Source: Haliotis cracherodii (Eukaryota). From it: DNA of 64,000 nucleotides. Under the pieces are notes generated by a model. That model had not been told where the DNA came from, ran no database searches, and was given only the letters and a program-made list of their open reading frames with translations. The translations under genes and the position numbers were made by a program. This document shows, in pieces, positions 3,852-64,000 of this stretch. The DNA lies in assembly GCF_022045235.1 (NCBI RefSeq), contig NW_027266280.1:1488001-1552000 (forward strand), given 5' to 3'. The first letter of the stretch is position 1. Every line of letters begins with the position of its first letter.

Positions 3852-4030
3852 AATGCCACGACTGAGACTCGAACAGTGCGAGCGGGCCCTGGGTATGATA
3901 CATTGCTAAAACTTTCGGTTGCTCCCGTGTTGGTGTAGCTAACCTGATGCAACGTTACAGATAGATCGGGAAGAGATAAGACAGGCCAAGAACAGGCAGA
4001 ACCCGGGTAACTACGCCCAATGAAGACTAT
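3852..4030 (+). mobile_element. Tc1 transposase 5' (HTH) fragment, inverted relative to 2800-2890
   Basis: MPRLRLEQCERALGM start. agacaggccaagaacaggcagaacccgggtaactacgcccaatgaagact is the near reverse complement of ~2803-2855. Confidence 0.7.
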
Positions 4031-4267
4031 GTGTGACGCCCATTTACGGTGTCCCCCGCCGTGCTATTGCTGGAATAGTGCTGAAAGCGACGTAAAACCA
4101 TACTCACTCACGACTGTGTCTTATGTGTTAGAGTTACGGCGCGGGATCACCTTATTATGAATACTGGATGACGCATGGAGTAATCAGACAGTCAGTTTTG
4201 TGTAATATTGTTGAAGATGAATTTCGTTGTATAAATGAATGTCCACTATATAACGATTTGCATCATA

Positions 4268-23596: not shown

Positions 23597-23740
23597 NNNN
23601 NNNNNNNNNNNNNNNNNNNNNNNNNNNNNNNNNNNNNNNNNNNNNNNNNNNNNNNNNNNNNNNNNNNNNNNNNNNNNNNNNNNNNNNNNNNNNNNNNNNN
23701 NNNNNNNNNNNNNNNNNNNNNNNNNNNNNNNNNNNNNNNN
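23597..23740. other. Assembly gap (144 N)
   Basis: Run of N, preceded by an ~80-bp tandem duplication at ~23341-23522. Confidence 1.
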
Positions 23741-33175: not shown

Positions 33176-33902
33176 AGCAACGCTATAGAACAACCACGAT
33201 AAGATAGCACAGTAGCCAGCCCCCTTCATTGTGGTACCCAACAACGCTATAGAAGAACCACGATAAGATAGCACAGTAGCCAGCCCCCTTCATTGTGGGA
33301 CAGAACAACGCTATAGAAGAACCACGATAAGATAGCACAGTAGCCAGCCACCTCCATTGTGGGACAGAACAACGCTATAGAAGAACCAGGATAAAATAGC
33401 ACAGTAGCCAGCCCCCTTCATTGTGGGACAGAAGAACACTATAGAAGAACCAGGATAAAATAGCACAGTAGCCAGTCCCCTTCATTGTGGGACAGAACAA
33501 CGCTATAGAAGAACCACGATAAGATAGCAGAGTAGCCAGCCACCTTCATTGTGGGACAGAACAACGCTATAGAAGAACCAGGATAAAATAGCACAGTAGC
33601 CAGCCCCCTTCATTGTGGGACAGAACAATGCTATAGAATAACCACTATACAATAGCACAGTAGCCAGCCCCCTTCATTGTGGGACAGAACAATGCTATAG
33701 AAGAACCACTATACAATAGCACAGTAGCCAGCCCCCTTCATTGTGGGACAGAACAATGCTATAGAATAACCACTATACAATAGCACAGTAGCCAGCCCCC
33801 TTCATTGTGGGACAGAACAATGCTATAGAAGAACCACTATACAATAGCACAGTAGCCAGCCACCTTCATTGTGGGACAGAACAATGCTATAGAAGAACCA
33901 CT
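33176..33902. repeat. 64-bp minisatellite (aacaacgctatagaagaaccac...agcacagtagccagcccccttcattgtgggacag), array 1
   Basis: About 11 units. The same family occurs at 48850-50780, 53936-54730 and 63930-64000. Confidence 0.95.
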
Positions 33903-34980: not shown

Positions 34981-35101
34981 GTGCCATCACTTGTTGACAG
35001 ACAGACCACACTCCACCGTCAGGCACAACATCAAGCGTTTGCTGTTCACAGATCATTTCCCACTTCAGTGAAAGTTTAAGTTAAAGTACTCAATTTCCAA
35101 C

Positions 35102-35740
35102 ATGATTTATGAGCTGTGTGTTCTGATCTGCGTAGGGATCCTCTCTGCGTCCGCTCTACCTGTCAACGACGCCTGGAAACACGTGGTCAGACAACGTCGT
35201 AACGCTGCCAACTGTCAACCACCTCAAGATATCAACCAACTCTTCCAAAGTCTCAACGCCAACACCGACACCTCCATCTTTCTTCGTAACGCTCAGGGTG
35301 CCAGACCGGGGTCATATTTACACAGCGAGCTGAACACCGACCAGGTGTTCGACAGTTCCCACCTCGGAGGCATCACCTGTCCCAGCAGCGTCAGTGACGA
35401 CCCTCAGGACCCCCTGTGGATGAGGTCCCTCTGTCCCTGGTACTACAATGTCACCGATCTGCCCGCCGGTCACTACCCAAGTGCCATCCCCCAGGCCGTG
35501 TGTAAGTGTGACAAATGCGTTGACAATAACCAAAACCAGTGCGAGAGAGTTTCCACTCAAATCCGAGTTTTAGAAAAAACTGGCTGTGAAAATGGTTTCT
35601 TTATCTACAAGCCCAAAATCGTCACCCATTTCGTTGGGTGCACTTGTGCCAAACGCCGGACACCAACAGTAGGTTCGAACACCGCCCCAACAGCATCAGA
35701 CAGTGAAAGCAGTTGTGGGGATTATGGATGTGCCCCCTAA
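35102..35740 (+). CDS. IL17: Interleukin-17 family cytokine, copy 3 (212 aa)
   Basis: Intact ORF with signal peptide and all IL-17 cystine-knot motifs. Differs from copy 6 at three residues. Confidence 0.95.
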   Translation: MIYELCVLICVGILSASALPVNDAWKHVVRQRRNAANCQPPQDINQLFQSLNANTDTSIFLRNAQGARPGSYLHSELNTDQVFDSSHLGGITCPSSVSDDPQDPLWMRSLCPWYYNVTDLPAGHYPSAIPQAVCKCDKCVDNNQNQCERVSTQIRVLEKTGCENGFFIYKPKIVTHFVGCTCAKRRTPTVGSNTAPTASDSESSCGDYGCAP

Positions 35741-37669
35741 ACGAGAGACTCGTAGACGATGTCGCCAATTGATGGTGTCATTTTCCAATGGACTTTTTCC
35801 AGTGAGGAAATACCGTGTTAGTCAGTGTCTGACAACTATCCCGTTTAGGTAGAAATGTGTTGTACAAAAGCTGCATTTCCGTCCATGTATGAAATGCCTT
35901 ATTTCTTCATACATCACCACGACATTAATTCAGTCCATTTCATTTATTTATTGTATGTGCTTAATCTATTAGAAATGCAATGTGTTTATTGTGATATTTA
36001 TTGTTTACAACGCATCAAGTTGAATGTTAAACTAATATCACCACACATTAATTGAATCCATTTCTATTTACATATTCATAAATTATTGTGTATGTTATAC
36101 TTATTGTGAATGTGTGGATTTTGCATGTTTACAGTGATGCATTTATTGCATTATTATTATGATATTATATTGTTTTTACAACGCATCAGCTTAAAACTTG
36201 GACTGATGTCTGTATGAATGTTTGTTTATTGCTCAAACACATGTTCATTCCATTTACCTAACTTATATACTTTTAGATTGTTATTTTTATTGTTGAATAA
36301 ATATTGTTTTCTATGAGAGAGTTTTTCCTTCTCCGTCACTGTCCGGTAGTGGACCTTAGCATCATGTTAGTATATCGGAGACTGCCATCAGCCACTAGTC
36401 ACATAAATTCCATTATTTGCATCAATCGCGCAGTCGTTTTTTCCAAAACCAATGCATACTTGCCCTGTGGGACCATTCTGACGTCATTATGATTGATGTG
36501 ACGTTATATACTTGTCACGTCACAATAGATTTGTGCATACGCGTAGAGGTCACGCCACGGGCCAATTGTCACACAGGATTACCTAACCTCAGAGTAAAGA
36601 TGCAATCATTGACTGTGTCATTAGTTTTTAAATCTAGCTGGCTGATCGCCTTTTTATGAAAAGACATATCATTGCACCGGCTAGTCATGACAATATTTGA
36701 TGTGGATGTTTAGAATGCTGCTTGTAATAGGCGTGGTATGAGGTGGCGATCAGATGATAGCGTGTTTTACCACATGTGATAAAGCTGTTCTCTGGGTTAC
36801 TCCGCCATATTCCAGCTTTATGACGGTTGTCTATAAATAATCAAATCTGGGCCAGATAATTCAGTGACTGACATCGTGAGCATCGACCTACGTAATTGGG
36901 ATACGATGACATGCATCAACCAAGTCAGTGAACCTGACCACCCGATCAGTCAATGTGTAAAATGATGGAAACTTTCACTTAGGCAATTTACAAACAGCCC
37001 AATTATTTCAGGCATTTTTCAATTATTTTTCTATGTATTATATTATAATAACAAATTCCAGGCCTTTTATGCTCTATTTCATCACCCAGAAAAAGAAAAC
37101 GAAAGTCAACATATATTTTATTTATTTTTGTGTTATATTACTTTAGTAAAATATGTTGCTGAAGATCAATTCTAACCCGGATCTTCACGGGTATGTTCTC
37201 CCTAACATAAATAGAGATGGGGTTACTTGTATGATGGCGACTTCACATGTTACACGCATTTAGTGATGAAATAATAAAATTTGTAAATATATAATCTATA
37301 CTTAACTCACGCGAAAAAACATGTTTATTTATATATATTTGTCATATAACAGAAATTTCAGCAAGGTTACAAACTGACCAAATTTAAGCCTTGGCTGTAA
37401 GATATAGCTGCCTCGATACTTAGCGAGACAGAACAACCGCTGCATGAACAACCGCTGCATGAAGAACGCCGAGGCACATGTAGGTCAGCGTGGACGTCAG
37501 AGATGTGCTTACGTTAAACAGAGATCCGGGTTCGAATCCTGACTCATTCTGGCGACTGGCGTTATAGATATCGCAGCTGCTTGTATGTTTAGACTTTATT
37601 AGCTACAATAAATTAACTAAACTTCTACCTGTGCGTTTCTTTTTTTGAGGAGTGAATATATTGAGGAAG

Positions 37670-46697: not shown

Positions 46698-47180
46698 ATG
46701 ATTTATGAGCTGTGTGTTCTGGTGTGCGTAGGGATCCTCTCTGCGTCCGCTCTACCTGTCAACGACGCCTGGAAACACGTGGTCAGACAACGTCGTAACG
46801 CTGCCAACTGTCAACCACCTCAAGATATCAACCAACTCTTCCAAAGTCTCAACGCCAACACCGACACCTCCATCTTTCTTCGTTACGCTCAGGGTGCCAG
46901 ACCGGGGTCATATTTACACAACGAGCTGAACACCGACCAGGTTTTCGACAGTTCCAACCTCGGAGGCATCACCTGTCCCAGCAGCGTCAGTGACGACCCT
47001 CAGGACCCCCTGTGGATGAGGTCCCTCTGTCCCTGGTACTACAACGTCACCGATCTGCCCGCCGGTCACTACCCAAGTGCCATCCAGGACGCGGTGTGTA
47101 GGTGTGTGAGGTGTGTTGACAACGCCAGAGCCAGGTGCGAGAGAGTTTCCACTCAAATCCGAGTTTTAGAAGAAAAGTGA
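46698..47180 (+). pseudogene. IL17: IL-17 copy 4, C-terminally truncated (160 aa) by a LINE tail
   Basis: Homology stops at 47175 after IRVLEE, followed by (GTGA)n. Lacks the terminal VGCTC cysteines. The missing 3' part was not seen elsewhere nearby. Confidence 0.8.
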
Positions 47181-48849: not shown

Positions 48850-50782
48850 ACCATATAGAAGAACCACTTTCAGATAGCACAGCAGCCGGCCCCCTTCATT
48901 GAGGGACAGAACAACGCTATAGAAGAACCACTATATAATAGCACAGTAGCCAGCCCCCTTCATTGTCGGACACAACAACGCTATAGAATAACCACCATAA
49001 ACTAGCACAGTAGCCAGCCCCCTTCGTTGTGGGACAGAACAACGCTATAGAATAACCACGACAAAATAACACAGTAGCCAGCCACCTCCATTGTCGGACA
49101 GAACAACGCTATAGAATAACCACTATACAATAGCACAGTAGCCAGTCCCCTTCGTTGTGGTTCAGAACAACGCTATAGAATAACCACTATACAATAGCAC
49201 AGTAGCCAGTCCCCTTCGTTGTGGTTCAGAACAACGCTATAGAATAACCACTATACAATAGCACAGTAGCCAGTCCCCTTCGTTGTGGTTCAGAACAACG
49301 CTATAGAATAACCACTATACAATAGCACAGTAGCCAGTCCCCTTCGTTGTGGTTCAGAACAACGCTATAGAATAACCACTATACAATAGCACAGTAGCCA
49401 GTCCCCTTCGTTGTGGTTCAGAACAACGCTATAGAATAACCACTATATAATAGCACAGTAGCCAGTCCCCTTCATTGTGGGACAGAACAACGCTATAGAA
49501 GAACCACTATACAATAGCACAGTAGCCAGTCCCCTTCGTTGTGGTTCAGAACAACGCTATAGAAGAACCACCATAAAATAGCACAGTAGCCAGCCACTTC
49601 ATTGTGTGACCCAACACGGCTATAGAAGAACCACTTTCAGATAGCACAGTCGCCAGCCCCCTTCATTGTGGGACAGAACAACGCTATAGAATAACCACTA
49701 TACAATAGCACAGTAGCCAGCCACTTCATTGTGTGACCCAACACGGCTATAGAAGAACCACTTTCAGATAGCACAGTAGCCAACCCCCATCGTTGTGGGA
49801 CAGAACAACGCTATAGAACAACCACCATAAAATAGCACAGTAGCCAGCCACTTCATTGTGTGACCCAACACGGCTATAGAAGAACCACTTTCAGATAGCA
49901 CAGTAGCCAGCTCCCTTCATTGTGTTACCGAACAACACTGTAGAATAACCACTATACAGTAGCAGAGTAGCCAGCCCCCTTCATTGTGGGACCGAACAAC
50001 ACTGTAGAACAACCACTATACAATAGCACAGTAGCCAGCCCCCTTCATTGTGTGACCCAACAAGGCTATAGAAGAACCACCATAAAATAGCACAGTAGCC
50101 AGCCACTTCATTGTGGGACAGAACAACGCCATAGAACAACCACCATAAAATAGCACAGTAGCCAGACCGTTCATTGTGTGACCCAACAAGGCTATAGAAG
50201 AACCACTATCAAATAGCACAGTAGCCAGCTCCCTTCATTGTGGGACAGAACAAAGCTATTGCCACCTTCATTGTGTGACCCAACAACGCCATAGAACAAC
50301 CGCGATAACATAGCACAGTAGCCAGCCCCCTTCATTGTTGGACAGAACAACGCCATAGAACAACCACCATAAAATAGCACTGTAGCCAGCCCCTTCATTG
50401 TTGGACAGAACAATGCTATAGAAGAACCACCATAAACTAATACAGTAGCCAGCCCCCTTCATTGTTGGACAGAACAACGCCATAGAACAACCACCATAAA
50501 ATAGCACTGTAGCCAGCCACTTCATTGTGTGACCCAACAAGGCTATAGAAGAACCAATATCAAATAGCACAGTAACCAGCTCCCTTCATTGTGGGACAGA
50601 ACAAAGCTATTGCCCCCTTCATTGTGTGACCCAACAACGCCATAGAACAACCGCGATAACATAGCACAGTAGCCAGCCCCCTTCATTGTTGGACAGAACA
50701 ACGCTATAGAATAACCACTATACAATAGCACAGTAGCCAGTCCCCTTCATTGTTGGACAGAACAATGCTATAGAGCAACCTC
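48850..50782. repeat. 64-bp minisatellite, array 2
   Basis: About 30 units, followed by the same unique flank as arrays 1 and 3. Confidence 0.95.
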
Positions 50783-52533
50783 TGGGTGGGTCAGTAGGTC
50801 AGTGTACGCGTCAGAGGTCTTCTAACATCAACACTAGGTCCGGTTTTGAAGCCTGATTCATGCAGAAGACTGACAATATTCACTTATTCGATACAGGCGA
50901 AGCTTGCATCTGACAAAGTATAATTTTCTGAAAAAGGCTGAATGCGCTCTGCAAGCAGATGGAATACAGGCCTGGTCCGTACGTGGAATCAGTCACATGT
51001 TCCTAAAAGGGCTTTGACTAAAACTGATGTACATGATTACAGATCGAGAGTTGCCTCCCTTAGCTGGCAGTATCCGCTGTTCGTTGGTTCGAATTTAGAA
51101 AAGTAGGGAAACTAATAATACCAGCACTTTTATCGATGGCTGGGCAGTGCATAGATCTTTTGGATTTGGTGACTTTAGATACTGATGGAAAGACAATCAA
51201 CTCCAGTTGCATGTTATACAATTTGGTTACACTGTGTGATGAAATAAAGACGTTGTAACACTTTTGATACAATGTATACGTTTTTGAAACAGCGACGTCA
51301 TCACAGTGCGGCACTGTGCGTATGCAGGCTGACTGACGTCCAGGCACTATGAGGGTTAAGACCGACATATTCCAGCTATATGACCGTGGTCTATAAATAA
51401 TCAAATCTGGACCAGATAATCCAGTGACTGACATCATGAGCATCGATCTACGTAACTGGGATACGATGACATGCATTAGTAAAGTCAGTGAACCTGACCA
51501 CCCGATCCCGTCAGTGGCTTCTTACGACACGAATATTTGCAAGCATGGGTTTATGAAGATGGAAAAGACATTCGCGCCAACAGGCAGGGGTAATTCACTT
51601 TCATCCGAAGGTGTACCAGTTCCAACCCGGAACTTCACGGGTATGTTCTTCCTAACATAAATAGAGATGGGGTTACTTGTATGATGGCGACTTCACATCT
51701 ATTACGCATTTAGTGATGAAATAATAAAATTTGTAAATATATAATCTATACTTAACTCACGCGAAAAAAACATGTTTATTTATATATATTTGTCATATAA
51801 CAGAAATTTCAGCACGGTTACAAACTGACCAAATTTAAGCCTTGGCTGTAACATATAGCTGTCATACTTAGCGAGACAGAACAACCGCTGCATGAACAAC
51901 CGCTGCATGAAGAACGCCGAGGCACATGTAGGTCAGCTTGGACGTTAGAGATGTGCTTACGTTAAACAGAGATCCGGGTTCGAATCCTGACTCATTCTGG
52001 CTATTGACGTTATATATATCGCAGCTGCTTGTATTCACAATAGGTTTTCTATTAGCTTGTAAGGTACATCTCGTAATTAAGTGAAAATTTATCGGTCTGA
52101 ATGGGGTATTCATGCTAAACTGAGGCATAGTATTCCAGTGGTCTAGCACTATAACATCAGCACTAGTCCGTACTGGTATAAATAATCTGGAAAGCGACGT
52201 TAACACTTTTATCTCACCTCATCTACATATAAAAATGAGGAAGTTTGAGGAAGTGTATAGACCCCCCCCACCCCCCACCCCACCCCCACCCCCCCCCCCA
52301 CCCCACCCCACCCCTATAGGGTGTACAAAGTATGTGTATATGTATATATATGGTGTACAGAGTATGTGTATGTGTTTACATAGGGTGTACAAAGTATGTG
52401 TATGTGGTTATTTAGGGTGTACAGAGTATATGTATATGTGTATATAGGGTGTGCAGAGTATTTGTATGTGTTTATATAGGGTTACAGGGTATGTGTATAT
52501 GTGTATATAGTGTGTACAGAGTATGTGTATATG

Positions 52534-52928
52534 TCAGCTTACATCACATCTAACGTCAACTAACATCACATCCACTGTCAGTTGACATCACATCTACCGT
52601 CAGTTGACATCACATCTACTTTCAGCTAACATCACATCTACTGTCAGCTAACATCACATCTACCGTCAGTTGACATCACATCCACCGTCAGCTGACATCA
52701 CATCTACCGTCAGCTGACATCACATCTACCGTCAGTTGACATCACATCTACCGTCAGTTGACATCACATCTACTGTCAGCTAACATCACATCTACTGTCA
52801 GCTAACATCACATCTACCGTCAGTTGACATCACATGCACCGTCAGCTGACATCACATCTACCGTCAGCTGACATCACATCTACCGTCAGTTGACATCACA
52901 TCTACCGTCAGCTGACATATCATCTACC
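52534..52928. repeat. 22-bp minisatellite, second array
   Basis: Same unit as 40811-42212. Confidence 0.93.
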
Positions 52929-53166
52929 CAAGCAGGAGAGAGAAAGCCTTCTGTTTCACTTTTCAGGCCAGCTGACTTATCCAAGCGAAGGACTCTTTGG
53001 CCACGTCAGCCAGCATTGCAGTAATAGTAACCGGATTTGTTGGTGTATATAAATGTATCACAAGTAACTGACAGATAGACCACTTCAATCAAACATCAAG
53101 CGTTTGCTTAACATCTGTGCAATTTCTACTAAAGTGTGCATTCTGTTTCACCAACTTTTTTCCATC

Positions 53167-53538
53167 ATGATTTATGAGCTGTGTGTTCTGATGTGCGTAG
53201 GGATCCTCTCTGCGTCCGCTCTACCTGTCAACGACACTTGGAAACACGTGGTCAGACAACGTCGTAACGCTGCCAACTGTCAACCACCTCAAGATATCAA
53301 CCAACTCTTCCAAAGTCTCAACGCCAACACCGACACCTCCATCTTTCTTCGTAACGCTCAGGGTGCCAGACCGGGGTCATATTTACACAACGAGCTGAAC
53401 ACCGACCAGGTGTTCGACAGTTCCCACCTCGGAGGCATCACCTGTCCCAGCAGCGTCAGTGACGACCCTCAGGACCCCCTGTGGTCTTCACGTATCGTAC
53501 CCAGGTGGGGAATCGAACCTAAAGTATTAGATACGTAA
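53167..53538 (+). pseudogene. IL17: IL-17 copy 5, truncated after DPLW by a junction into a SINE fragment
   Basis: ATG at 53167. Homology ends at 53484, then cttcacgtatcgtacccaggtggggaatcgaacc (antisense SINE A). The whole cystine-knot core is lost. Confidence 0.88.
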
Positions 53539-53687
53539 TGTCCTTCCATCACGAGCCAGTTGTGAGGTACTACAGTTTCTTTTGTCACTTTGAATAAATG
53601 TTGATTTCTAGACGAAAGCCTTCCTACTTCGTTCATGTTCAGTAGAAGATATGAGAGTACCCATTCATTACTCGGACTTTATGTGAT

Positions 53688-53812
53688 TGAATGATTGATA
53701 GGATTTGATTAATTGATAAGATTTGATTGATTGATAGGACTTGACTGATTGATAGAACTTGACTGATTGATAGGACTTGATTGACTGATTGATAAGACTT
53801 GATTGATAAGAC

Positions 53813-53843
<31 letters not shown>
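53688..53843. repeat. (GATT)n-derived low-complexity repeat
   Basis: Direct reading. Confidence 0.85.
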
Positions 53844-53844
<1 letters not shown>

Positions 53845-53935
53845 AATGTTTTTGATACGGGTATCACAACTGTGTTTGGACATTAAAGTTGGAATGTCTC
53901 GGCGACTGTTTACAGACGAGCAACTTTTTGTAATA

Positions 53936-54730
53936 CTTCATTGTGTGACCCAACAACGCCATAGAAGAAGCACTATCTAATTGCACAGTAGCCAGCCTGT
54001 CCACGATTTGACCCAACAACGTTATAGAGGAACTACTATCAGTAGCCAGCCACCTTCATTGTGGGACAGAGCAACGCTATAGAGGAACTACTATCAAATA
54101 GCACAGTAGCCAGCCCCCTTCATTGTGGGGCCCTACAACGCTATAGAACAACCACTATATAATAGCACAGTAGCCAGCCCCCTTCATTGTGTGACCAAAC
54201 AACACTATAGAACAACCACTATATAATAGCACAGTAGCCAGCCCCCTTCATTGTGTGACCAAACAACACTATAGAACAACCACTATATAATAGCACAGTA
54301 GCCAGCCCCCTTCATTGTTGGACAGAACAATGCTATAGAACAACCACTATATAATAGCACAGTAGCCAGCCCCCTTCATTGTGTGACCAAACAACACTAT
54401 AGAACAACCACTATATAATAGCACAGTAGCCAGCCCCCTTCATTGTTGGACAGAACAATGCTATAGAACAACCACTATATAATAGCACAGTAGCCAGCCC
54501 CCTTCATTGTTGGACAGAACAATGCTATAGAACAACCACTATACAATAGCACAGTAGCCAGCCCCCTTCATTGTGTGACCAAACAACACTATAGAACAAC
54601 CACTATATAATAGCACAGTAGCCAGCCCCCTTCATTGTTGGACAGAACGATGCTATAGAACAACCACTATATAATAGCACAGTAGCCAGTCCCCTTCATT
54701 GTTGGACAGAACGATGCTATAGAACAACCT
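53936..54730. repeat. 64-bp minisatellite, array 3
   Basis: Same family as arrays 1 and 2. Confidence 0.93.
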
Positions 54731-55706
54731 CTGGGTGGGTCAGTAGGTCAGTGTACGCGTCAGAGGTCTTCTTACATCAACACTAGGTCCGGTTTTGAAG
54801 CCTGATTCATGCAGAAGACTGACAATATTCACTTATTCGATACAGGCGAAGCTTGCATCTGACAAAGTATAATTTTCTGAAAAAGGCTGAATGCGCTCTG
54901 CAAGCTGATGGAAAACAGGCCTTGTCCGTATGTGGAATCAGTCACATGTTCCCAAAAGGGCTCTGACTAAAACTGGTCTTCATGATTACAGATCGAGAGT
55001 TGCCTCCCTTAGCTGGCAGTATCCGCTGTTCGTTGGTTCGAATCCAAGATTCGCCCAGAAATATCCTCCCTGGTCTGTCAGCACCAGACCCAGGCTCGTA
55101 CAGTACACAGTTACAACCTGCGTCACTCACACGAGAAAATCAACAACCAATCACATGATCGGCCAAAAGGCACGGATATTTGTTTCCGGGTGCTTAATTG
55201 TGAGGGCACTTCGTTATAACACTTGTCAGAAAATATCTGATGAAATGTTGTCAAATACAAAGATAGGAAAATATGGAGGATAATCCGAAACTACATCACT
55301 ATACGTACATGTACATCCTCAACAAACATAAAATATGACTACAACAATCAGCGTTATAACGAAGTACACATGTGCACTTCAAGACGAGCGTGTCAGTTTC
55401 ATTCAGAATACGGATTTCTTAACATAGTCAGCAAACACAAATGCTTATATGTACAGAGGGTTGATGTTTTTGTGACTTCGTTAATGAATATTCCCAATAC
55501 TGATCGTCATTGACAAATTCCTCCATCCGTCCACGCGTTCGTGGGTTTCTAATCAACTTTCCATGGGATTATTTGAGATGATGGTCTTGCTACAAAGTAT
55601 CTTCATGCCTGGGCAACCAAGAGGAACAATAACGGAAATACATCAGTGAGTAGCTACCTCATCCCACATGTTACGCTGAAAGTGCGACAAATGTATATTT
55701 AGCCGA

Positions 55707-55740
55707 GGGACACCCCACCGGATTTGTTAGTGTATATAAT
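55707..55740 (+). promoter_or_regulatory. kB + ETS-like + TATA core promoter of copy 6 (mirror 62919-62952 on minus for copy 7)
   Basis: GGGACACCCC-ACCGGATTT-...-TATATAAT, identical to copy 3. Confidence 0.72.
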
Positions 55741-55861
55741 GTGCCATCACTTGTTGACAGACAGACCACACTCCACCGTCAGGCAAAACATCAAACGTTT
55801 GCTGTTCACAGATCATTTCCCACTTCAGTGAAAGTTTAAGTTAAAGTACTCGATTTCCAAC

Positions 55862-56500
55862 ATGATTTATGAGCTGTGTGTTCTGATCTGCGTAGGGATC
55901 CTCTCTGCGTCCGCTCTTCCTGTCAACGACGCCTGGAAACACGTGGTCAGACAACGTCGTAACGCTGCCAACTGTCAACCACCTCAAGATATCAACCAAC
56001 TCTTCCAAAGTCTCAACGCCAACACCGACACCTCCATCTTTCTTCGTAACGCTCAGGGTGCCAGACCGGGGTCATATTTACACAGCGAGCTGAACACCGA
56101 CCAGGTGTTCGACAGTTCCCACCTCGGAGGCATCACCTGTCCCAGCAGCGTCAGTGACGACCCTCAGGACCCCCTGTGGATGAGGTCCCTCTGTCCCTGG
56201 TACTACAACGTCACCGATCTGCCCGCCGGTCACTACCCAAGTGCCATCCCCCAGGCCGTGTGTAAGTGTGACAAATGCGTTGACAATAACCAAAACCAGT
56301 GCGAGAGAGTTTCCACTCAAATCCGAGTTTTAGAAGAAACTGGCTGTGAAAATGGTTTCTTTATCTACAAGCCCAAAATCGTCACCCATTTCGTTGGGTG
56401 CACTTGTGCCAAACGCCGCACACCAAAAGTAGGTTCGAACACCGCCCCAACAGCATCAGACAGTGAAAACAGTTGTGGGGATTATGGATGTGCCCCCTAA
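55862..56500 (+). CDS. IL17: Interleukin-17 family cytokine, copy 6 (212 aa)
   Basis: Intact ORF with signal peptide and IL-17 motifs. Confidence 0.95.
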   Translation: MIYELCVLICVGILSASALPVNDAWKHVVRQRRNAANCQPPQDINQLFQSLNANTDTSIFLRNAQGARPGSYLHSELNTDQVFDSSHLGGITCPSSVSDDPQDPLWMRSLCPWYYNVTDLPAGHYPSAIPQAVCKCDKCVDNNQNQCERVSTQIRVLEETGCENGFFIYKPKIVTHFVGCTCAKRRTPKVGSNTAPTASDSENSCGDYGCAP

Positions 56501-57203
56501 ACGAGAGACTCGTAGACGATGTCGCCAATTGATGGTGTCATTTTCCAATGGACTTTTTCCAGTGAGGAAATACCGTGTTAGTCAGTGTCTGACAACTATC
56601 CCGTTTAGGTAGAAAGGTTTTCTACAAAAGCTGCATTTCCGTCCATGTATGGAATGCCTTATTTCTTCATACATCACCACGACATTAATTCAGTCCATTT
56701 CATTTATTTATTGTATGTCTTAATTTATTAGAAATGTGTGTATTTTGAATATTTACAATTATGCATTTATTGCAATGTGTTTATTGTGATATTTATTGTT
56801 TACAACGCATCAAGTTGAATGTTGAACTAATATCACCACACATTAATTAAATCCATTTCTATTTACATATTCATAAATTATTGTGTATGTTATACTTATT
56901 GTGAATGTGTGGATTTCTACAGTGATGCATTTATTGCATTATTATTATGATATTATATTGTTTTTACAACGCATCAGCTTAAAACTTGGACCGATGTCTG
57001 TATGAATGTTTGTTTATTGCTCAAACACATGTTCATTCCATTCACCCAATTTATATACGTTTAGGTTGTTATTTTTATTGTTGACATGTTGAATAAATAT
57101 TGTTTTCTAAGAGAGAGTTTTTCCTTCTCCGCCACTGTCCGGTAGAGGATCCAAGAATTCTGTTAGTATATAGGAGACTTCCATCAGCCACTAACCACAT
57201 ACA

Positions 57204-57421
57204 AATATACCATTGCCAAGTCGATGTCTTTCCAAACTGACGCCATTTTTATTTATGTGACGTCACATACTCGACGCGTCACTACAGATAGCAGTAGAGC
57301 ATCGTACATGTCAATATACCATTGCCAAGTCGATGTCTTTCCAAACTGACGCCATTTTTATTTATGTGACGTCACATTCTCGACGCGTCACTACAGATAG
57401 CAGTAGAGCATCGTACATGTC
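57204..57421. repeat. 109-bp tandem duplication containing a TGACGTCA palindrome
   Basis: Units 57204-57312 and 57313-57421. tatgtgacgtcacata at 57254-57269. Confidence 0.85.
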
Positions 57422-58078
57422 TCACAGGAAGGATGTACGGGTTGTTAATATATAAATATAATGGGTTGGTTTTTCGGCAGGATAAAGCCAACGGATAAAA
57501 ACGATATCGGTTGGGGTCATATGCAAATATCACAGAGCAAGTAGGGACTACTTTCAGTGTTGATAAACAAACATGGCGTCGCCCTTGTCATTCGGCAATC
57601 GACTCAGAATTAACCGTCGGCAATCTGGAGACACTACTGGGATAATTGCTATCATTGTCAAGGGAATAGTCTAATATACTGAATAACAGTGTCTAACTGT
57701 GACGTAGCTTAGACATTTTGTGTTTTGGCTGCTTTGGAGATATAAATTGCGAACACAATTTAACGAGGACACGAGCCAAGCGGGATCAGTCTCAATATCT
57801 GTTCTTGTAGACCTCTACGACTTAGAACCTTTTCCCAATTTAACCAAAAAGCTGGATTTGGCCGAAATATGTTCGAATTGTCTGTACATCTGACTTTGAA
57901 CATTGTAACGTTATGACAGGACAAGCAGACTCGTAACAAACGTGACGTCTCATAGACCAGGGTTAGAATATTTTCCCTTTGATAAAGGACAGTTATCCTT
58001 GCGGGCGGGCCAATGGATTGCCGCGAAAGGCAAGTAGAAACAACATATGTAGGCAATTGTTACTTTGCCTGTGTATAG

Positions 58079-58183
58079 GTTAGACCACGAGGACCCAGTG
58101 TCTAATCGTTGAAATGGTTATTTAAACCACCTGGTTTAATCAACCATTTCAACGATTAGACACTGGGGTCCGAGTGGTCTAAC
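58079..58183. mobile_element. 105-bp hairpin/MITE-like element (mirror 60476-60580)
   Basis: gttagaccac...ttaaacc-acct-ggtttaa...gtggtctaac, ~50-bp arms with a 4-nt loop. Confidence 0.75.
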
Positions 58184-58707
58184 ATATTTAAACCATATCC
58201 AACATTTATGGCACCTAAAATTCTTAAGAAACATTGTTTTGTTTAAGATATTTTGAAGATATTCAGGAACTCTATGCTCAGCTGTGAGAACACTGTGTGA
58301 GTCGGCCCTGCGTGAAGCACGTGAAATGTGTTCCCCGAGCCTTTTGCACGTGCCACTCGCACTTTGCCGATTTGGGTTATGAAATGCATGTCACGGGGCA
58401 GGTATACCATTCATTTTGGACCAACTCGAGCACATTTATCAATCAACTAAATAGTACTTGCCCATGTTGATGGGCCTATTATGAGTAAATGTAGCCCTGA
58501 TCAAGATAATAGTAAATTTTTTTCTATCTGTTCGTTTCGTTGAACGAAAAGCTACAAAATCACAAGTACTGTACAAATACTAGAATGCATAGAGTAACAT
58601 ATTGTATAAAAGTTGCATAAAACACATATCGCAATTCATAAAGGAATAAGCAATTGGTACTGATGTAAGTAAATATCTAGTTGTTAATTTCATACCCTAT
58701 CTCCCAT

Positions 58708-58779
58708 GTCGCCGTGGCAGAAGACTACATTCGTTAGCCTTCAGTGCGGACTTCTCGGGTTCGAATCCCGCTGGTGACA
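58708..58779 (+). other. tRNA-like element / pseudo-tRNA (mirror 59880-59951 minus)
   Basis: 7-bp acceptor stem GTCGCCG/TGGTGAC, T-arm CGGG-TTCGAAT-CCCG and downstream TTTTT. D and anticodon arms pair poorly. Confidence 0.45.
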
Positions 58780-59020
58780 AACGTTTTTCATAAAATTGTT
58801 CTATCATCAAGACAAAAGATAGAGGAAAAAAGAAGTTCCGTCATTGCCAAGTGGTGTTCAACTAACAATTCAGTTAGTTAAACCTCGGTCAAAGACAAAG
58901 CAGCCATTGTTCAAATATTGTTACGCCACTGTCTGAGAAACACGTTTCAGTTGGAACAATATTGACTGTTATAACTGTCCGACTAAAGAATAACCGACCT
59001 TGTGACGTACTCTATACATG

Positions 59021-59117
59021 TATTAGCGAGTCTGACCACCCGATCCCGTTAGTCGACAAGCAGGGTCGCCTTTTACATGTGTTGCTGAACACCTATTCAA
59101 ACCCGGATCTTCACGGG
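59021..59117 (-). mobile_element. SINE family B fragment at the inner palindrome junction
   Basis: agcgagtctgaccacccgatcccgttagtcg...cccggatcttcacggg. Confidence 0.8.
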
Positions 59118-62100
59118 TTGAAAACGCAGATTGTTTTATTGTGAAGTAAAACATACTCCAATGCATTTTTTCAGTGAACAGTTGAACCTTTTTTATATAA
59201 ATGTACGCGAAAGATTTCATAATATTCTATAAATAACAAGAACTACCGCAATGTTTTATAACAACAAAACTCCACCGACAAATCCATGAATTTCAATAAC
59301 TGTGAGTCATACAAGTGTCTGTTCACCCTTCAAGTAATCACACTGAGATTCTGTCAGCGGTCCGAAGACAAATGGAGAACCTCACCCAAATGTATTTTGA
59401 CATCAACAAAAGCCGATAAATACAGGTTGTCTCGCGAGTGCGTTTTGGGATGGTAAAAATCCTGTATTAGTAAAAAAACAGTGTATTTAGCGAGCCTTGG
59501 GCTAATACAGGATATTTACCATCCCAAAACACACAAGGGTGATAATGTCTTTCCTAAATTCTGTGAGCGAAAAATGTTCTCATCTCCCACAAACATTACC
59601 TAACCATTGCAAGTTTTCCTGGAATATGCGCATTAATACATGTATAGAGTACGTCACAAGGTCGGTTATTCTTTAGTCGGACAGTTATAACAGTCAATAT
59701 TGTTCCAACTGAAACGTGTTTCTCAGACAGTGGCGTAACAATATTTGAACAATGGCTGCTTTGTCTTTGACCGAGGTTTAACTAACTGAATTGTTAGTTG
59801 AACACCACTTGGCAATGACGGAACTTCTTTTTTCCTCTATCTTTTGTCTTGATGATAGAACAATTTTATGAAAAACGTTTGTCACCAGCGGGATTCGAAC
59901 CCGAGAAGTCCGCACTGAAGGCTAACGAATGTAGTCTTCTGCCACGGCGACATGGGAGATAGGGTATGAAATTAACAACTAGATATTTACTTACATCAGT
60001 ACCAATTGCTTATTCCTTTATGAATTGCGATATGTGTTTTATGCAACTTTTATACAATATGTTACTCTATGCATTCTAGTATTTGTACAGTACTTGTGAT
60101 TTTGTAGCTTTTCGTTCAACGAAACGAACAGATAGAAAAAAATTTACTATTATCTTGATCAGGGCTACATTTACTCATAATAGGCCCATCAACATGGGCA
60201 AGTACTATTTAGTTGATTGATAAATGTGCTCGAGTTGGTCCAAAATGAATGGTATACCTGCCCCGTGACATGCATTTCATAACCCAAATCGGCAAAGTGC
60301 GAGTGGCACGTGCAAAAGGCTCGGGGAACACATTTCACGTGCTTCACGCAGGGCCGACTCACACAGTGTTCTCACAGCTGAGCATAGAGTTCCTGAATAT
60401 CTTCAAAATATCTTAAACAAAACAATGTTTCTTAAGAATTTTAGGTGCCATAAATGTTGGATATGGTTTAAATATGTTAGACCACTCGGACCCCAGTGTC
60501 TAATCGTTGAAATGGTTGATTAAACCAGGTGGTTTAAATAACCATTTCAACGATTAGACACTGGGTCCTCGTGGTCTAACCTATACACAGGCAAAGTAAC
60601 AATTGCCTACATATGTTGTTTCTACTTGCCTTTCGCGGCAATCCATTGGCCCGCCCGCAAGGATAACTGTCCTTTATCAAAGGGAAAATATTCTAACCCT
60701 GGTCTATGAGACGTCACGTTTGTTACGAGTCTGCTTGTCCTGTCATAACGTTACAATGTTCAAAGTCAGATGTACAGACAATTCGAACATATTTCGGCCA
60801 AATCCAGCTTTTTGGTTAAATTGGGAAAAGGTTCTAAGTCGTAGAGGTCTACAAGAACAGATATTGAGACTGATCCCGCTTGGCTCGTGTCCTCGTTAAA
60901 TTGTGTTCGCAATTTATATCTCCAAAGCAGCCAAAACACAAAATGTCTAAGCTACGTCACAGTTAGACACTGTTATTCAGTATATTAGACTATTCCCTTG
61001 ACAATGATAGCAATTATCCCAGTAGTGTCTCCAGATTGCCGACGGTTAATTCTGAGTCGATTGCCGAATGACAAGGGCGACGCCATGTTTGTTTATCAAC
61101 ACTGAAAGTAGTCCCTACTTGCTCTGTGATATTTGCATATGACCCCAACCGATATCGTTTTTATCCGTTGGCTTTATCCTGCCGAAAAACCAACCCATTA
61201 TATTTATATATTAACAACCCGTACATCCTTCCTGTGAGACATGTACGATGCTCTACTGCTATCTGTAGTGACGCGTCGAGAATGTGACGTCACATAAATA
61301 AAAATGGCGTCAGTTTGGAAAGACATCGACTTGGCAATGGTATATTGACATGTACGATGCTCTACTGCTATCTGTAGTGACGCGTCGAGTATGTGACGTC
61401 ACATAAATAAAAATGGCGTCAGTTTGGAAAGACATCGACTTGGCAATGGTATATTTGTATGTGGTTAGTGGCTGATGGAAGTCTCCTATATACTAACAGA
61501 ATTCTTGGATCCTCTACCGGACAGTGGCGGAGAAGGAAAAACTCTCTCTTAGAAAACAATATTTATTCAACATGTCAACAATAAAAATAACAACCTAAAC
61601 GTATATAAATTGGGTGAATGGAATGAACATGTGTTTGAGCAATAAACAAACATTCATACAGACATCGGTCCAAGTTTTAAGCTGATGCGTTGTAAAAACA
61701 ATATAATATCATAATAATAATGCAATAAATGCATCACTGTAGAAATCCACACATTCACAATAAGTATAACATACACAATAATTTATGAATATGTAAATAG
61801 AAATGGATTTAATTAATGTGTGGTGATATTAGTTCAACATTCAACTTGATGCGTTGTAAACAATAAATATCACAATAAACACATTGCAATAAATGCATAA
61901 TTGTAAATATTCAAAATACACACATTTCTAATAAATTAAGACATACAATAAATAAATGAAATGGACTGAATTAATGTCGTGGTGATGTATGAAGAAATAA
62001 GGCATTCCATACATGGACGGAAATGCAGCTTTTGTAGAAAACCTTTCTACCTAAACGGGATAGTTGTCAGACACTGACTAACACGGTATTTCCTCACTGG

Positions 62101-62158
62101 AAAAAGTCCATTGGAAAATGACACCATCAATTGGCGACATCGTCTACGAGTCTCTCGT

Positions 62159-62797
62159 TTAGGGGGCACATCCATAATCCCCACAACTGTTTTCACTGTC
62201 TGATGCTGTTGGGGCGGTGTTCGAACCTACTTTTGGTGTGCGGCGTTTGGCACAAGTGCACCCAACGAAATGGGTGACGATTTTGGGCTTGTAGATAAAG
62301 AAACCATTTTCACAGCCAGTTTCTTCTAAAACTCGGATTTGAGTGGAAACTCTCTCGCACTGGTTTTGGTTATTGTCAACGCATTTGTCACACTTACACA
62401 CGGCCTGGGGGATGGCACTTGGGTAGTGACCGGCGGGCAGATCGGTGACGTTGTAGTACCAGGGACAGAGGGACCTCATCCACAGGGGGTCCTGAGGGTC
62501 GTCACTGACGCTGCTGGGACAGGTGATGCCTCCGAGGTGGGAACTGTCGAACACCTGGTCGGTGTTCAGCTCGCTGTGTAAATATGACCCCGGTCTGGCA
62601 CCCTGAGCGTTACGAAGAAAGATGGAGGTGTCGGTGTTGGCGTTGAGACTTTGGAAGAGTTGGTTGATATCTTGAGGTGGTTGACAGTTGGCAGCGTTAC
62701 GACGTTGTCTGACCACGTGTTTCCAGGCGTCGTTGACAGGAAGAGCGGACGCAGAGAGGATCCCTACGCAGATCAGAACACACAGCTCATAAATCAT
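62159..62797 (-). CDS. IL17: Interleukin-17 family cytokine, copy 7 (protein identical to copy 6)
   Basis: Mirror of 55862-56500 in the palindrome. Confidence 0.92.
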   Translation of the reverse strand: MIYELCVLICVGILSASALPVNDAWKHVVRQRRNAANCQPPQDINQLFQSLNANTDTSIFLRNAQGARPGSYLHSELNTDQVFDSSHLGGITCPSSVSDDPQDPLWMRSLCPWYYNVTDLPAGHYPSAIPQAVCKCDKCVDNNQNQCERVSTQIRVLEETGCENGFFIYKPKIVTHFVGCTCAKRRTPKVGSNTAPTASDSENSCGDYGCAP

Positions 62798-64000
62798 GTT
62801 GGAAATCGAGTACTTTAACTTAAACTTTCACTGAAGTGGGAAATGATCTGTGAACAGCAAACGTTTGATGTTTTGCCTGACGGTGGAGTGTGGTCTGTCT
62901 GTCAACAAGTGATGGCACATTATATACACTAACAAATCCGGTGGGGTGTCCCTCGGCTAAATATACATTTGTCGCACTTTCAGCGTAACATGTGGGATGA
63001 GGTAGCTACTCACTGATGTATTTCCGTTATTGTTCCTCTTGGTTGCCCAGGCATGAAGATACTTTGTAGCAAGACCATCATCTCAAATAATCCCATGGAA
63101 AGTTGATTAGAAACCCACGAACGCGTGGACGGATGGAGGAATTTGTCAATGACGATCAGTATTGGGAATATTCATTAACGAAGTCACAAAAACATCAACC
63201 CTCTGTACATATAAGCATTTGTGTTTGCTGACTATGTTAAGAAATCCGTATTCTGAATGAAACTGACACGCTCGTCTTGAAGTGCACATGTGTACTTCGT
63301 TATAACGCTGATTGTTGTAGTCATATTTTATGTTTGTTGAGGATGTACATGTACGTATAGTAATGTAGTTTCGGATTATCCTCCATATTTTCCTATCTTT
63401 GTATTTGACAACATTTCATCAGATATTTTCTGACAAGTGTTATAACGAAGTGCCCTCACAATTAAGCACCCGGAAACAAATATCCGTGCCTTTTGGCCGA
63501 TCATGTGATTGGTTGTTGATTTTCTCGTGTGAGTGACGCAGGTTGTAACTGTGTACTGTACGAGCCTGGGTCTGGTGCTGACAGACCAGGGAGGATATTT
63601 CTGGGCGAATCTTGGATTCGAACCAACGAACAGCGGATACTGCCAGCTAAGGGAGGCAACTCTCGATCTGTAATCATGAAGACCAGTTTTAGTCAGAGCC
63701 CTTTTGGGAACATGTGACTGATTCCACATACGGACAAGGCCTGTTTTCCATCAGCTTGCAGAGCGCATTCAGCCTTTTTCAGAAAATTATACTTTGTCAG
63801 ATGCAAGCTTCGCCTGTATCGAATAAGTGAATATTGTCAGTCTTCTGCATGAATCAGGCTTCAAAACCGGACCTAGTGTTGATGTAAGAAGACCTCTGAC
63901 GCGTACACTGACCTACTGACCCACCCAGAGGTTGTTCTATAGCATCGTTCTGTCCAACAATGAAGGGGACTGGCTACTGTGCTATTATATAGTGGTTGTT

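What the first reader, a model, noticed from the sequence alone, without database searches (positions are those of the whole stretch)
54659..64000. Gene-bearing palindrome: two identical IL-17 genes tail-to-tail on arms of at least 4.37 kb
Seen: arms 54659-59025 and 59634-64000 are reverse complements around a 608-bp unique spacer. I noticed a single mismatch (55297/63362), and the right arm runs off the window. The left arm ends exactly at a SINE-B fragment. Known: such palindromes (e.g. on sex chromosomes) are maintained by arm-to-arm gene conversion and can flip their spacer. Inference: a very recent foldback duplication or a conversion-maintained dosage amplifier for an immune cytokine. 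Read-through of the convergent genes could also form long dsRNA. An assembly or chimeric-read artefact is a real alternative, although the unique spacer and the SNP argue against it.
Basis: partly seen in the sequence, partly recalled or inferred. Interest (0 to 1): 0.75.

Follow-up and report, generated by a model that had tools for sequence, protein, structure and literature searches.

The report
Abalone IL-17 gene palindrome, 8-kb arms
In an abalone genome, an 8-kb piece at the end of a cluster of IL-17 immune-signal genes was copied backwards next to itself, giving two identical tail-to-tail genes; this looks like a real but fairly ordinary kind of gene duplication.

Summary
The inverted repeat sits at the stated coordinates, with 1 mismatch in 4,367 bases and a 608-bp spacer. 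Each arm carries an intact 212-aa IL-17 gene, and the two genes are tail-to-tail.

Sequence beyond the window shows the arms are longer: 51092-59025 (7,934 bp) against 59634-67951 (8,318 bp). They are 99.79% identical, and the indels lie at or next to tandem or simple repeats.

The genome is an abalone (Haliotis). The locus closes a cluster of 23 IL-17 loci.

New here is the direction of copying. Both ends of the right arm lie inside interspersed repeats that run on intact past the arm. The left arm carries only truncated pieces of those repeats. It joins its flanks at a 3-bp microhomology and at a truncated SINE-like element. So the left arm is the derived copy, made by a fold-back or template-switch inverted duplication.

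The differences cluster in the outermost 1.2 kb, and the inner 3.7 kb has none. This hints at later arm-to-arm gene conversion.

Contigs from two independent runs hold the spacer and the spacer/right-arm junction. They give arm depth of roughly 2-3 times spacer depth. The two new junctions could not be bridged.

An assembly artefact is unlikely. A dosage-amplifier or dsRNA role is unsupported. This is a new member of a known kind, of modest interest.

The parts
51092..59025 (+). Left arm of the palindrome (7,934 bp). This is the derived, inverted copy.
   Evidence: BLAST and MAFFT alignment against the reverse complement of 59634-67951: 7,908 aligned columns, 17 substitutions, 3 indel events. 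Both of its ends carry truncated pieces of interspersed repeats.
59026..59633 (.). Spacer of 608 bp. It consists of a SINE-like 3' fragment, about 300 bp with no other copy found in the genome, and the first 215 bp of a ~325-bp repeat.
   Evidence: A contig covering 59033-59531 is present with 0 differences in run X1 and 1 difference in run X5.
59634..64000 (-). Right arm, the ancestral template. It continues beyond the window to composite position 67951 (G000:C17:1555951) and is 8,318 bp in all.
   Evidence: Both of its boundaries lie inside repeat copies that continue intact outside the arm.
55862..56500 (+). Intact IL-17 gene, left copy (212 aa plus stop, one open frame).
   Evidence: ORF. 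Pfam IL17 match. 98% identical over its full length to a 212-aa Haliotis rufescens 'interleukin 17-like protein'. Conserved cysteines.
62159..62797 (-). Intact IL-17 gene, right copy, identical to the left one.
   Evidence: G000:C17:1550162-1550797, minus strand, 100%. There is no arm difference inside 55298-59025.
53167..53505 (+). Truncated IL-17 fragment (matches residues 1-113) in the outer half of the left arm. Its mirror copy lies beyond the window at composite 65190-65528.
   Evidence: 92% identity over residues 1-113, at both places. No Pfam domain found.
51092..51094 (.). Outer new junction J1: 3-bp microhomology (AAT) between the truncated IL-17-unit flank and the start of the inverted copy.
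   Evidence: The flank is identical to the paralogous unit at 45 of 45 positions up to 51094. Arm homology starts at 51092.
51092..51359 (-). Truncated 268-bp piece of a ~935-bp interspersed repeat. The full copy lies at composite 67684-68616 and spans the outer end of the right arm.
   Evidence: 40 of 45 non-self matches run across the boundary position; 7 of 7 aligned copies are contiguous there.
58919..59025 (-). Truncated 107-bp end piece of the ~325-bp interspersed repeat, at the inner end of the left arm.
59419..59740 (+). The ~325-bp interspersed repeat copy that runs unbroken across the spacer/right-arm boundary 59633|59634.
   Evidence: 8 of 8 other copies are contiguous across this point.
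59026..59117 (+). 5'-truncated 3' piece of a ~300-bp SINE-like element. It starts exactly at the inner new junction J2 (59025|59026).
   Evidence: the 30-mer 59026-59055 has 1,767 exact copies in the genome; alignment of 10 copies; hundreds of reads diverge exactly before 59026 and after 59055.
58068..58918 (.). ~850-bp interspersed repeat inside the arm. Its mirror copy is at 59741-60591.
   Evidence: many copies genome-wide at 82-92% identity over query positions 3410-4260.
52533..52928 (.). 22-bp minisatellite. It is 374 bp longer in the right arm.
54040..54729 (.). 64-bp tandem array upstream of the IL-17 gene.
   Evidence: Mirrored units beyond the window end are seen.
55297..55297 (.). 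The only arm-to-arm mismatch inside the window (its partner is 63362), 565 bp upstream of the ATG.
   Evidence: In runs X1 and X5 a 454-bp contig (55129-55582) runs unbranched through this site with the left-arm letter.

Best explanation
This is a real inverted segmental duplication (a palindrome) at the distal end of a tandem IL-17 cytokine gene cluster in an abalone (Haliotis) genome.

How it formed. An 8-kb segment holding one intact IL-17 gene, one truncated IL-17 fragment, several minisatellites and transposon copies was copied in reverse orientation. The copy was joined in 608 bp away from its template. The right arm plus the spacer is the ancestral sequence, and the left arm is the copy.

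The junctions. The copied tract began and ended inside two transposon copies. Its two new junctions are non-homologous. One (J1) has a 3-bp microhomology with a neighbouring IL-17 unit that it cut off. The other (J2) lies inside a SINE-like element, with 0-1 bp of overlap.

Likely mechanism. This is the signature of a break or stalled fork repaired in one of two ways. Either the end folded back and primed on its own strand, with the spacer being the loop, or there were two microhomology-mediated template switches. Which of the two cannot be told here.

Afterwards. The arms gained a few substitutions and minisatellite length changes. The inner 6-7 kb was probably re-homogenised by arm-to-arm gene conversion.

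Net effect. There are two identical convergent IL-17 genes. That is one more copy of an already multi-copy paralogue. The structure is also prone to recombination.

Shown: the anatomy, the direction of copying, and the microhomology. Inferred: the repair pathway, the gene conversion, and any functional effect.
For: Geometry:
- Searches give arms of 7,934 and 8,318 bp, 99.79% identical over 7,908 aligned columns.
- The three indels (26, 374 and 36 bp) lie at or next to tandem or simple repeats.
- Both outer ends are sharp.

Gene content:
- Pfam IL17 match.
- 98% identity to a Haliotis rufescens IL-17-like protein.
- 23 distinct IL-17 places on C17 between 1.169 and 1.558 Mb (27 of the 30 matches are on C17, and 4 of those are second pieces of one gene).

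Direction of copying:
- The ~325-bp repeat is contiguous across 59633|59634 in 8 of 8 other copies.
- The ~935-bp repeat is contiguous across 67951|67952 in 40 of 45 non-self matches and in 7 of 7 aligned copies.
- The left arm holds only the 107-bp and 268-bp end pieces of these repeats.
- The right flank stays collinear with a paralogous unit.

Junctions:
- J1 has an AAT overlap, and the flank is 45/45 identical to the unit upstream region.
- J2 starts a 5'-truncated SINE-like piece.

Not a single-molecule artefact:
- The arms differ by 17 substitutions and three indels.
- In the repeat part, 3 of 4 differences are derived on the left arm and 1 on the right.

Independent runs:
- The spacer contig is present in X1 and X5, which come from two studies.
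- A contig joins the spacer to the right arm in both runs.
- Six non-coding arm contigs average depth 18.9 against 10.8 for the spacer in X1, and 68.5 against 19.9 in X5.

Gene conversion hint:
- 9 of 10 non-repeat substitutions lie in the outermost 1,223 bp and 1 in the other 5,028 bp (Fisher P = 3e-6). The inner 3,728 bp has none.
Against: - Neither new junction was seen bridged by independent reads. J1 (51091|51092) lay outside the stretch I laid.
- At J2 (59025|59026) contigs break, because 59026-55 is a 30-mer with 1,767 genomic copies. No bridging record was among those listed, and 7,597 records were not shown.
- The tool itself warns that contig depth is not a copy number.
- The two runs give different ratios (about 1.75 and about 3.4).
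- The raw-read run X21 gave nothing usable: about 1 in 100 of it was read, and all 484 laid reads fitted only partly.
- Four of the nine outer substitutions sit next to a 26-bp indel in a simple stretch and may be one event.
- The clustering of differences could instead come from a primary assembly that mixes two haplotypes, or from error-prone repair synthesis.
- No RNA evidence was found.
Confidence: 0.75

Rival explanations
1. Assembly artefact. A fold-back chimeric read, or an inverted misjoin of the two haplotypes, created a false second arm. The real genome would then hold one arm only.
For: - The inner 3.7 kb of the arms is identical.
- The two new junctions J1 and J2 are not confirmed by independent reads.
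- The one mismatch inside the window is not seen as a branch in X1 or X5.
- An arm divergence of about 0.2% is in the range of allelic variation.
Against: - A chimeric molecule would give identical arms and no 608-bp spacer with a stretch found nowhere else. The arms differ by 17 substitutions and by indels of 26, 374 and 36 bp.
- A haplotype misjoin would need two false joins placed inside repeats, one of them with a 3-bp microhomology. It would also give arm depth equal to spacer depth, but the arms are deeper in both X1 and X5.
- There is no gap near the palindrome. The only N run in the window is 23597-23740.
Confidence: 0.1
2. The palindrome is kept by selection as a conversion-maintained dosage amplifier for an immune cytokine, with a spacer that can flip.
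For: - Both gene copies are intact and identical, with about 1.1 kb of upstream sequence between each gene and the 64-bp array, and more beyond.
- The differences avoid the inner arms.
- Arm depth is raised in two individuals.
- Arm identity above 99% matches what is reported for conversion-maintained primate palindromes (PMC8327919, passages read).
Against: - The cluster already has 23 IL-17 places, and one paralogue (35102-35737) is 99% identical in protein. The dosage gain is therefore small.
- The event also removed the rest of a neighbouring unit.
- The structure is probably young, so identity needs no selection.
- There are no expression data.
- Spacer orientation was not tested.
Confidence: 0.15
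3. A source of dsRNA or small RNA. Read-through of the convergent genes across the spacer yields long double-stranded RNA.
For: The convergent orientation and the identical arms would allow it in principle.
Against: - The stop codons are 5.66 kb apart.
- ATTAAA lies at 56846 and AATAAA at 57092, which are 346 and 592 nt after the stop.
- No listed holder of the stretch is an RNA run, and two RNA-like runs of the same organism hold next to none of its words.
Confidence: 0.03

Closest known systems
Large sex-chromosome palindromes of primates and mice (human Y P1-P8; 26 human X palindromes)
   Same: - Inverted arms more than 99% identical around a spacer with a part found nowhere else.
- Protein-coding gene family members sit in the arms.
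- Differences are distributed as if arm-to-arm conversion acts.
- The spacer length (608 bp) is inside the reported range of 77 bp to 358 kb (PMC8327919, passages read).
   Different: - Much smaller: the arms are 7.9 and 8.3 kb, at the lower limit of the 8-kb criterion.
- It lies in a mollusc, on a contig not known to be sex-linked, and inside a tandem immune-gene array.
- It is probably young.
- Gene conversion and conservation between species are not shown.
Fold-back inverted duplications with a normal-copy spacer (Hermetz et al. 2014, PMC3907307; abstract read)
   Same: - An inverted copy next to its template, separated by a spacer present once.
- Non-homologous junctions with little or no microhomology.
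- The spacer can be read as the fold-back loop.
   Different: - The human cases are megabase-scale, mostly terminal, tied to terminal deletions or translocations, and pass through dicentric chromosomes.
- This one is 8 kb, interstitial, and closed by a second junction with 3-bp microhomology.
- The short inverted sequence expected at the spacer boundary cannot be seen here.
Tandem IL-17 gene expansions of marine invertebrates (Saco et al. 2021, PMC8353272; passages read)
   Same: Many IL-17 genes lie side by side, with near-identical paralogues. Here there are 23 places within 0.39 Mb of C17.
   Different: - That paper reports head-to-tail tandem repeats. A word search of its main text found no use of 'inverted'.
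- It states that the two gastropods it analysed (Biomphalaria, Aplysia) lack the expansion. This abalone has it.
Template-switch rearrangements (FoSTeS/MMBIR, DUP-TRP/INV-DUP). Recalled from general knowledge; no paper on them was read here.
   Same: An inverted copied segment, a deletion of intervening sequence, and junctions with 0-3 bp of microhomology.
   Different: - There is no triplicated segment.
- No pre-existing inverted repeat can be shown to have mediated the switch.

Membership tests
Large palindrome (criteria of Jackson et al. 2021, PMC8327919) | Inverted repeat arms longer than 8 kb | tested here: inconclusive
   The left arm is 7,934 bp and the right arm 8,318 bp. One is just under the limit and one just over.
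Large palindrome (criteria of Jackson et al. 2021, PMC8327919) | Arm-to-arm nucleotide identity above 99% | tested here: met
   99.79% over 7,908 aligned columns.
Large palindrome (criteria of Jackson et al. 2021, PMC8327919) | Less than 500 kb between the arms | tested here: met
   608 bp.
Large palindrome (conversion-maintained) | Ongoing arm-to-arm gene conversion | tested here: inconclusive
   9 of 10 non-repeat substitutions lie in the outermost 1.2 kb and none in the inner 3.7 kb. Other causes are possible. No population data were available.
Fold-back inverted duplication (Hermetz et al. 2014) | A normal-copy spacer between the inverted and non-inverted copies | tested here: met
   No other copy of 59118-59415 was found in the assembly (only 40 of 3,053 candidates were scored). 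The spacer contig is shallower than the arm contigs in X1 and X5.
Fold-back inverted duplication (Hermetz et al. 2014) | Short inverted sequence at the boundary of the spacer and the duplication | not testable with these tools
   Any such bases would now read as the innermost bases of the arms. At most 1 base (A at 59025) could also come from the SINE-like element.
Fold-back inverted duplication (Hermetz et al. 2014) | An adjacent terminal deletion, translocation or ring | tested here: not met
   The structure is interstitial, at 1.54 Mb of a 10.8-Mb contig, and closed by a second junction. So it works like a fold-back event but is not a member of that clinical class.
IL-17 cytokine family (Pfam PF06083) | IL-17 domain above the curated score | tested here: met
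   43 bits against a cut-off of 24, residues 109-183.
IL-17 cytokine family (Pfam PF06083) | Conserved cysteines of the C-terminal domain | tested here: met
   Invariant C111, C134, C136, C139, C147, C162, C180 and C182 among 7 abalone sequences. That these form the knot is an inference.
IL-17 cytokine family (Pfam PF06083) | A secreted cytokine that signals through an IL-17 receptor | not testable with these tools
   A hydrophobic N-terminus is seen by eye. No signal-peptide tool or assay was available.

The most novel reading that the evidence does not exclude
The palindrome is specific to this abalone species and still active. Arm-to-arm conversion keeps its inner arms identical. Its 8-kb inverted arms make the end of the IL-17 cluster a hot spot for spacer inversion and copy-number change between individuals. 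Run X5 shows about 3.4 times spacer depth against about 1.75 times in X1. The related organism B shows no clear excess in three of five non-coding arm contigs. That would make it a rare autosomal, immune-gene counterpart of sex-chromosome palindromes, in an invertebrate.
Probability: 0.2. Interest if true: 0.5.

Novelty: new member of a known kind. Interest (0 to 1): 0.3.

Why it matters
The locus shows at base resolution how an invertebrate immune gene cluster gains an inverted copy. Both breakpoints fall inside transposon copies, so template and copy can be told apart without an outgroup. One junction carries a 3-bp microhomology.

If the skew in differences reflects gene conversion, this is a small autosomal palindrome that behaves like the large sex-chromosome ones. 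For abalone immunity the practical point is modest: one more identical copy of an already multi-copy IL-17 paralogue, in a structure prone to further rearrangement.

Short-read mapping and gene counts at this locus need care, because the two arms collapse onto each other.

Tried and rejected
**Raw reads.** Only about 1 in 100 of run X21 was read. All 484 laid reads fitted only partly and came from two very abundant repeat pieces near 57524 and 59026-59055. The run gave no usable depth and no junction evidence.

**Bridging the new junctions.** Bridging J2 (59025|59026) with Logan contigs was not resolved. Contigs break at the 30-mer that has 1,767 genomic copies, and no bridging record was listed.

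**Organism B, run X10.** Whether the related organism has the duplication stayed inconclusive. Three arm contigs have depth 10.3-16.4 and two others have 26 and 55.9. Spacer pieces have 11.4-21.

**Rfam.** A search on two full copies of the SINE-like element and on the left arm gave 0 matches. The label 'SINE-B' is therefore unverified.

**RNA.** No RNA holder was found, so expression and the dsRNA idea could not be tested.

**Earlier notes of the scan.** Only a note on another IL-17 copy in this window and two first-reader notes of palindromes elsewhere in this genome came up. None was checked.

**Literature.** I found no paper on an IL-17 palindrome or on an abalone IL-17 cluster. Supplementary files were not opened, so Supplementary Table ST2 of PMC8353272 (gene structure and context) might bear on orientation in other species.

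**Considered and rejected:**
- Two independent transposon insertions as the origin of the inner arm ends. The left copy is a truncated end piece.
- The left arm as the template. Both right-arm boundaries lie inside intact repeats.
- Homology-driven gene conversion between older inverted paralogues as the origin. Both new junctions lack homology.
Full report
**1. The observation**

The repeat finder reports arms 54659-59025 and 59634-64000, 4,367 nt each, with 608 nt between them. A base-by-base comparison finds one mismatch in 4,367, at 55297/63362. The spacer matches its own reverse complement at 27% of positions, which is chance level.

Each arm carries a 212-aa open frame, at 55862-56500 on the + strand with its mirror image at 62159-62797 on the - strand. 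The frame matches Pfam IL17 at E 6e-11, with 43 bits against a cut-off of 24. The two genes are identical and convergent.

**2. True extent**

The window is G000:C17:1488001-1552000 of a 1.18-Gb genome in 80 contigs. I fetched the sequence beyond the window. With it, the arms are 51092-59025 (7,934 bp) and 59634-67951 (8,318 bp, counted on from the window's coordinates).

A global alignment gives 7,908 aligned columns, 17 substitutions (99.79% identity) and three indel events:
- 26 bp in a simple stretch;
- 374 bp in a 22-bp minisatellite;
- 36 bp in an 18-bp repeat.

An earlier alignment with other settings placed some of these differences slightly differently. Outside 51092 and 67951 the similarity drops at once to chance. 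It lies inside a 64-bp tandem array.

**3. Organism and surroundings**

The protein is 98% identical over its whole length to a 212-aa 'interleukin 17-like protein' of Haliotis rufescens. The other named hits are from H. rubra and H. asinina (10 proteins with E <= 0.001 among 48 candidates). The genome is therefore an abalone.

A six-frame search of the genome gives 30 matches. Of these, 27 are on C17 between 1.169 and 1.558 Mb, and 3 are on C3. Four of the C17 matches are second pieces of one gene, which leaves 23 distinct places.

In and just beyond the window the copies run as follows:
- On the + strand: 28927; 35102; 46698 (a TGA inside); 53167 (truncated); 55862.
- On the - strand: 62162; 65190 (truncated); 69440 (a TAG inside).

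No further match lies to the right, so the palindrome closes the cluster. Saco et al. describe tandem IL-17 expansions in marine bivalves, an octopus and a sea urchin. They state that the two gastropods they analysed lacked the expansion (PMC8353272, passages read).

**4. Which arm is the copy**

*Inner boundary of the right arm.* The last 215 bp of the spacer and the first 107 bp of the right arm (59419-59740) form one copy of an interspersed repeat with many copies at 72-81% identity. In 8 of 8 other copies that I aligned, the sequence is contiguous across the point matching 59633|59634. The left arm holds only the 107-bp end piece (58919-59025).

*Outer boundary of the right arm.* The right flank is collinear with a paralogous unit (35088-37586), except for an extra 1,022 bp at 67682-68703. 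That extra piece is a ~935-bp interspersed repeat at 67684-68616. Forty of 45 non-self matches run across the position matching 67951|67952, as do 7 of 7 aligned copies. The left arm holds only 268 bp of it (51092-51359).

Both right-arm boundaries are therefore ordinary, unbroken sequence, and both left-arm ends are breakpoints. The right arm plus spacer is ancestral, and the left arm is the derived inverted copy. I regard this as shown.

**5. The new junctions**

*J1 (outer).* The left flank is identical at 45 of 45 positions to the upstream region of an IL-17 unit (54999-55043), up to 51094. Arm homology begins at 51092. Three bases (AAT) are shared, which is a microhomology. By comparison with the unit in the arm, that unit's gene would lie about 0.8 kb further on. 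The event therefore cut off a neighbouring unit.

*J2 (inner).* The spacer starts exactly at 59026 with the 3' part (to about 59117) of a ~300-bp SINE-like element. The 5' ~165 bp of that element is missing. The 30-mer 59026-59055 occurs 1,767 times in the genome, against 0 for the reversed control. At most one base (A at 59025) could belong to either side.

Some ancestral sequence between J1 and J2 was lost. This fits two routes:
- A broken end folded back and primed on its own strand 608 nt away, copied 8 kb, and was then joined to the other end.
- Two microhomology-mediated template switches occurred at a fork.

Hermetz et al. describe the fold-back route and its normal-copy spacer for large human duplications (PMC3907307, abstract read). 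I cannot tell the two routes apart.

**6. After the duplication**

Of 10 substitutions outside tandem repeats, 9 lie in the outermost 1,223 bp and 1 in the remaining 5,028 bp (Fisher P = 3e-6). The inner 3,728 bp has none. Four of the nine sit beside the 26-bp indel and may be one event.

In the ~935-bp repeat part, 3 of 4 differences are derived on the left arm and 1 on the right, judged against 7 other copies.

My preferred reading is arm-to-arm gene conversion that re-homogenised the inner arms, at about 45%. The alternatives are error-prone repair synthesis towards the end of the copied tract, or an assembly that mixes two haplotypes.

Pieces from the related organism B that passed the 95% filter differ from the window by 33 letters in 1,635. 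That is about 2% and a lower bound. The outer-arm divergence of 0.5-0.7% therefore suggests an origin after the two organisms split.

**7. Independent reads**

Runs of organism A from three studies hold 0.63-0.81 of the sampled words. Runs of organism B hold 0.34-0.36. No holder is on record as RNA.

I laid 54800-59760 on X1 and X5 (contigs, two studies), X21 (raw reads) and X10 (organism B). The results for my reading:
- A contig covering 59033-59531 is present with 0 differences in X1 and 1 difference in X5.
- In both runs one contig joins the spacer's right end to the arm. It is reported as a joint on opposite strands, 58898 to 59760, with 127 letters fitting both sides and 51 or 48 letters beyond.
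- In X1, six non-coding arm contigs have depths 14.8, 19.8, 27, 22.1, 16.2 and 13.3, against 10.8 for the spacer.
- In X5, the depths are 69.3, 59.1, 86.5, 97, 50 and 49.1, against 19.9 for the spacer.

The results against my reading, or neutral:
- The tool warns that such depth is not a copy number.
- The two ratios differ.
- X21 was useless.
- A 454-bp contig runs unbranched through 55297 with the left-arm letter in both runs. The one in-window mismatch is therefore private to the assembled individual or a consensus error.
- Organism B is inconclusive. Arm contigs have depths 10.3, 13.5, 16.4, 26 and 55.9, against 11.4-21 for spacer pieces.

**8. Is it an artefact?**

A chimeric molecule would give identical arms and no spacer containing sequence found nowhere else. 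A haplotype misjoin would need two false joins inside repeats, one with a 3-bp microhomology, and would give equal depth for arms and spacer.

The arms differ in minisatellite length and in 17 bases. The arms are deeper than the spacer in two independent runs. No gap lies nearer than 23597-23740. I put an artefact at about 0.1.

**9. Function**

The duplicated gene is intact, and its cysteines are invariant among seven abalone sequences. It is only one extra copy of a paralogue that also exists at 35102 (99% identical protein) and 28927 (95%). A dosage-amplifier role is therefore not supported.

For dsRNA, transcripts would have to read through 5.66 kb, past ATTAAA at 56846 and AATAAA at 57092. 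No RNA data bear on this.

**10. Comparison with known kinds**

By the criteria used for primate X palindromes (arms over 8 kb, identity over 99%; PMC8327919, passages read), this structure sits at the lower size limit. It meets the identity and spacer criteria.

It works like a fold-back inverted duplication. It is not a member of the clinical class, because it is interstitial and small.

I found no paper on an IL-17 palindrome or on an abalone IL-17 cluster.

**11. Verdict**

This is a real, probably species-specific, 8-kb-arm inverted duplication at the end of an abalone IL-17 cluster. The direction of copying and the junctions are resolved. There is a hint of gene conversion. It is a new member of a known kind, of modest interest.

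Noticed in passing
G000:C3:28181247-28182049 and 28189885-28190688 (L046, L047): A second inverted IL-17 pair, this one head-to-head. Only 804 bp around the coding sequence is repeated, at 99.1% identity, with 7.8 kb between the copies. The flanks are unrelated. This looks like gene conversion or a small duplication limited to the gene.
   Followed up: partly
G000:C17:1169154-1558024: There are 23 distinct IL-17 places within 0.39 Mb, with several changes of orientation. The one comparative paper I read reports no such expansion in the two gastropods it analysed (PMC8353272).
   Followed up: partly
window 33178-33901, 48854-50780, 54040-54729: A 64-bp tandem array recurs upstream of IL-17 units. 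Its copy number varies from about 11 to 22 or more. Its role is unknown.
   Followed up: no
window 59026-59055 and genome-wide: A ~300-bp SINE-like element. One 30-mer from it has 849 forward and 918 reverse exact copies in the genome. Two full copies gave no Rfam match.
   Followed up: partly
window 57456-57621: Another very abundant repeat piece inside the arm. Summed contig depth reaches 48,225 in X1 and 158,136 in X5, and loose ends start behind 57524.
   Followed up: no
window 59636-59645 (mirror 59014-59023): A self-complementary 10-mer (ATACATGTAT) sits 2 nt from the inner end of each arm. The other copies of the ~325-bp repeat read differently there. A role in the rearrangement is not shown.
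   Followed up: no
window 46698-47180; composite 69353-70038 (G000:C17:1557353-1558038): Two IL-17 pseudogene copies flank the palindrome region. One has an in-frame TGA and the other an in-frame TAG.
   Followed up: no
window 58075-58187: The ~850-bp interspersed repeat in the arm begins with a 113-bp stretch that matches itself on the opposite strand at 88%.
   Followed up: no
other pieces of the same genome: First-stage readers noted a ~31.6-kb 'fossil palindrome' and a ~37-kb imperfect palindrome elsewhere in this genome. Inverted duplications may be common in it.
   Followed up: no
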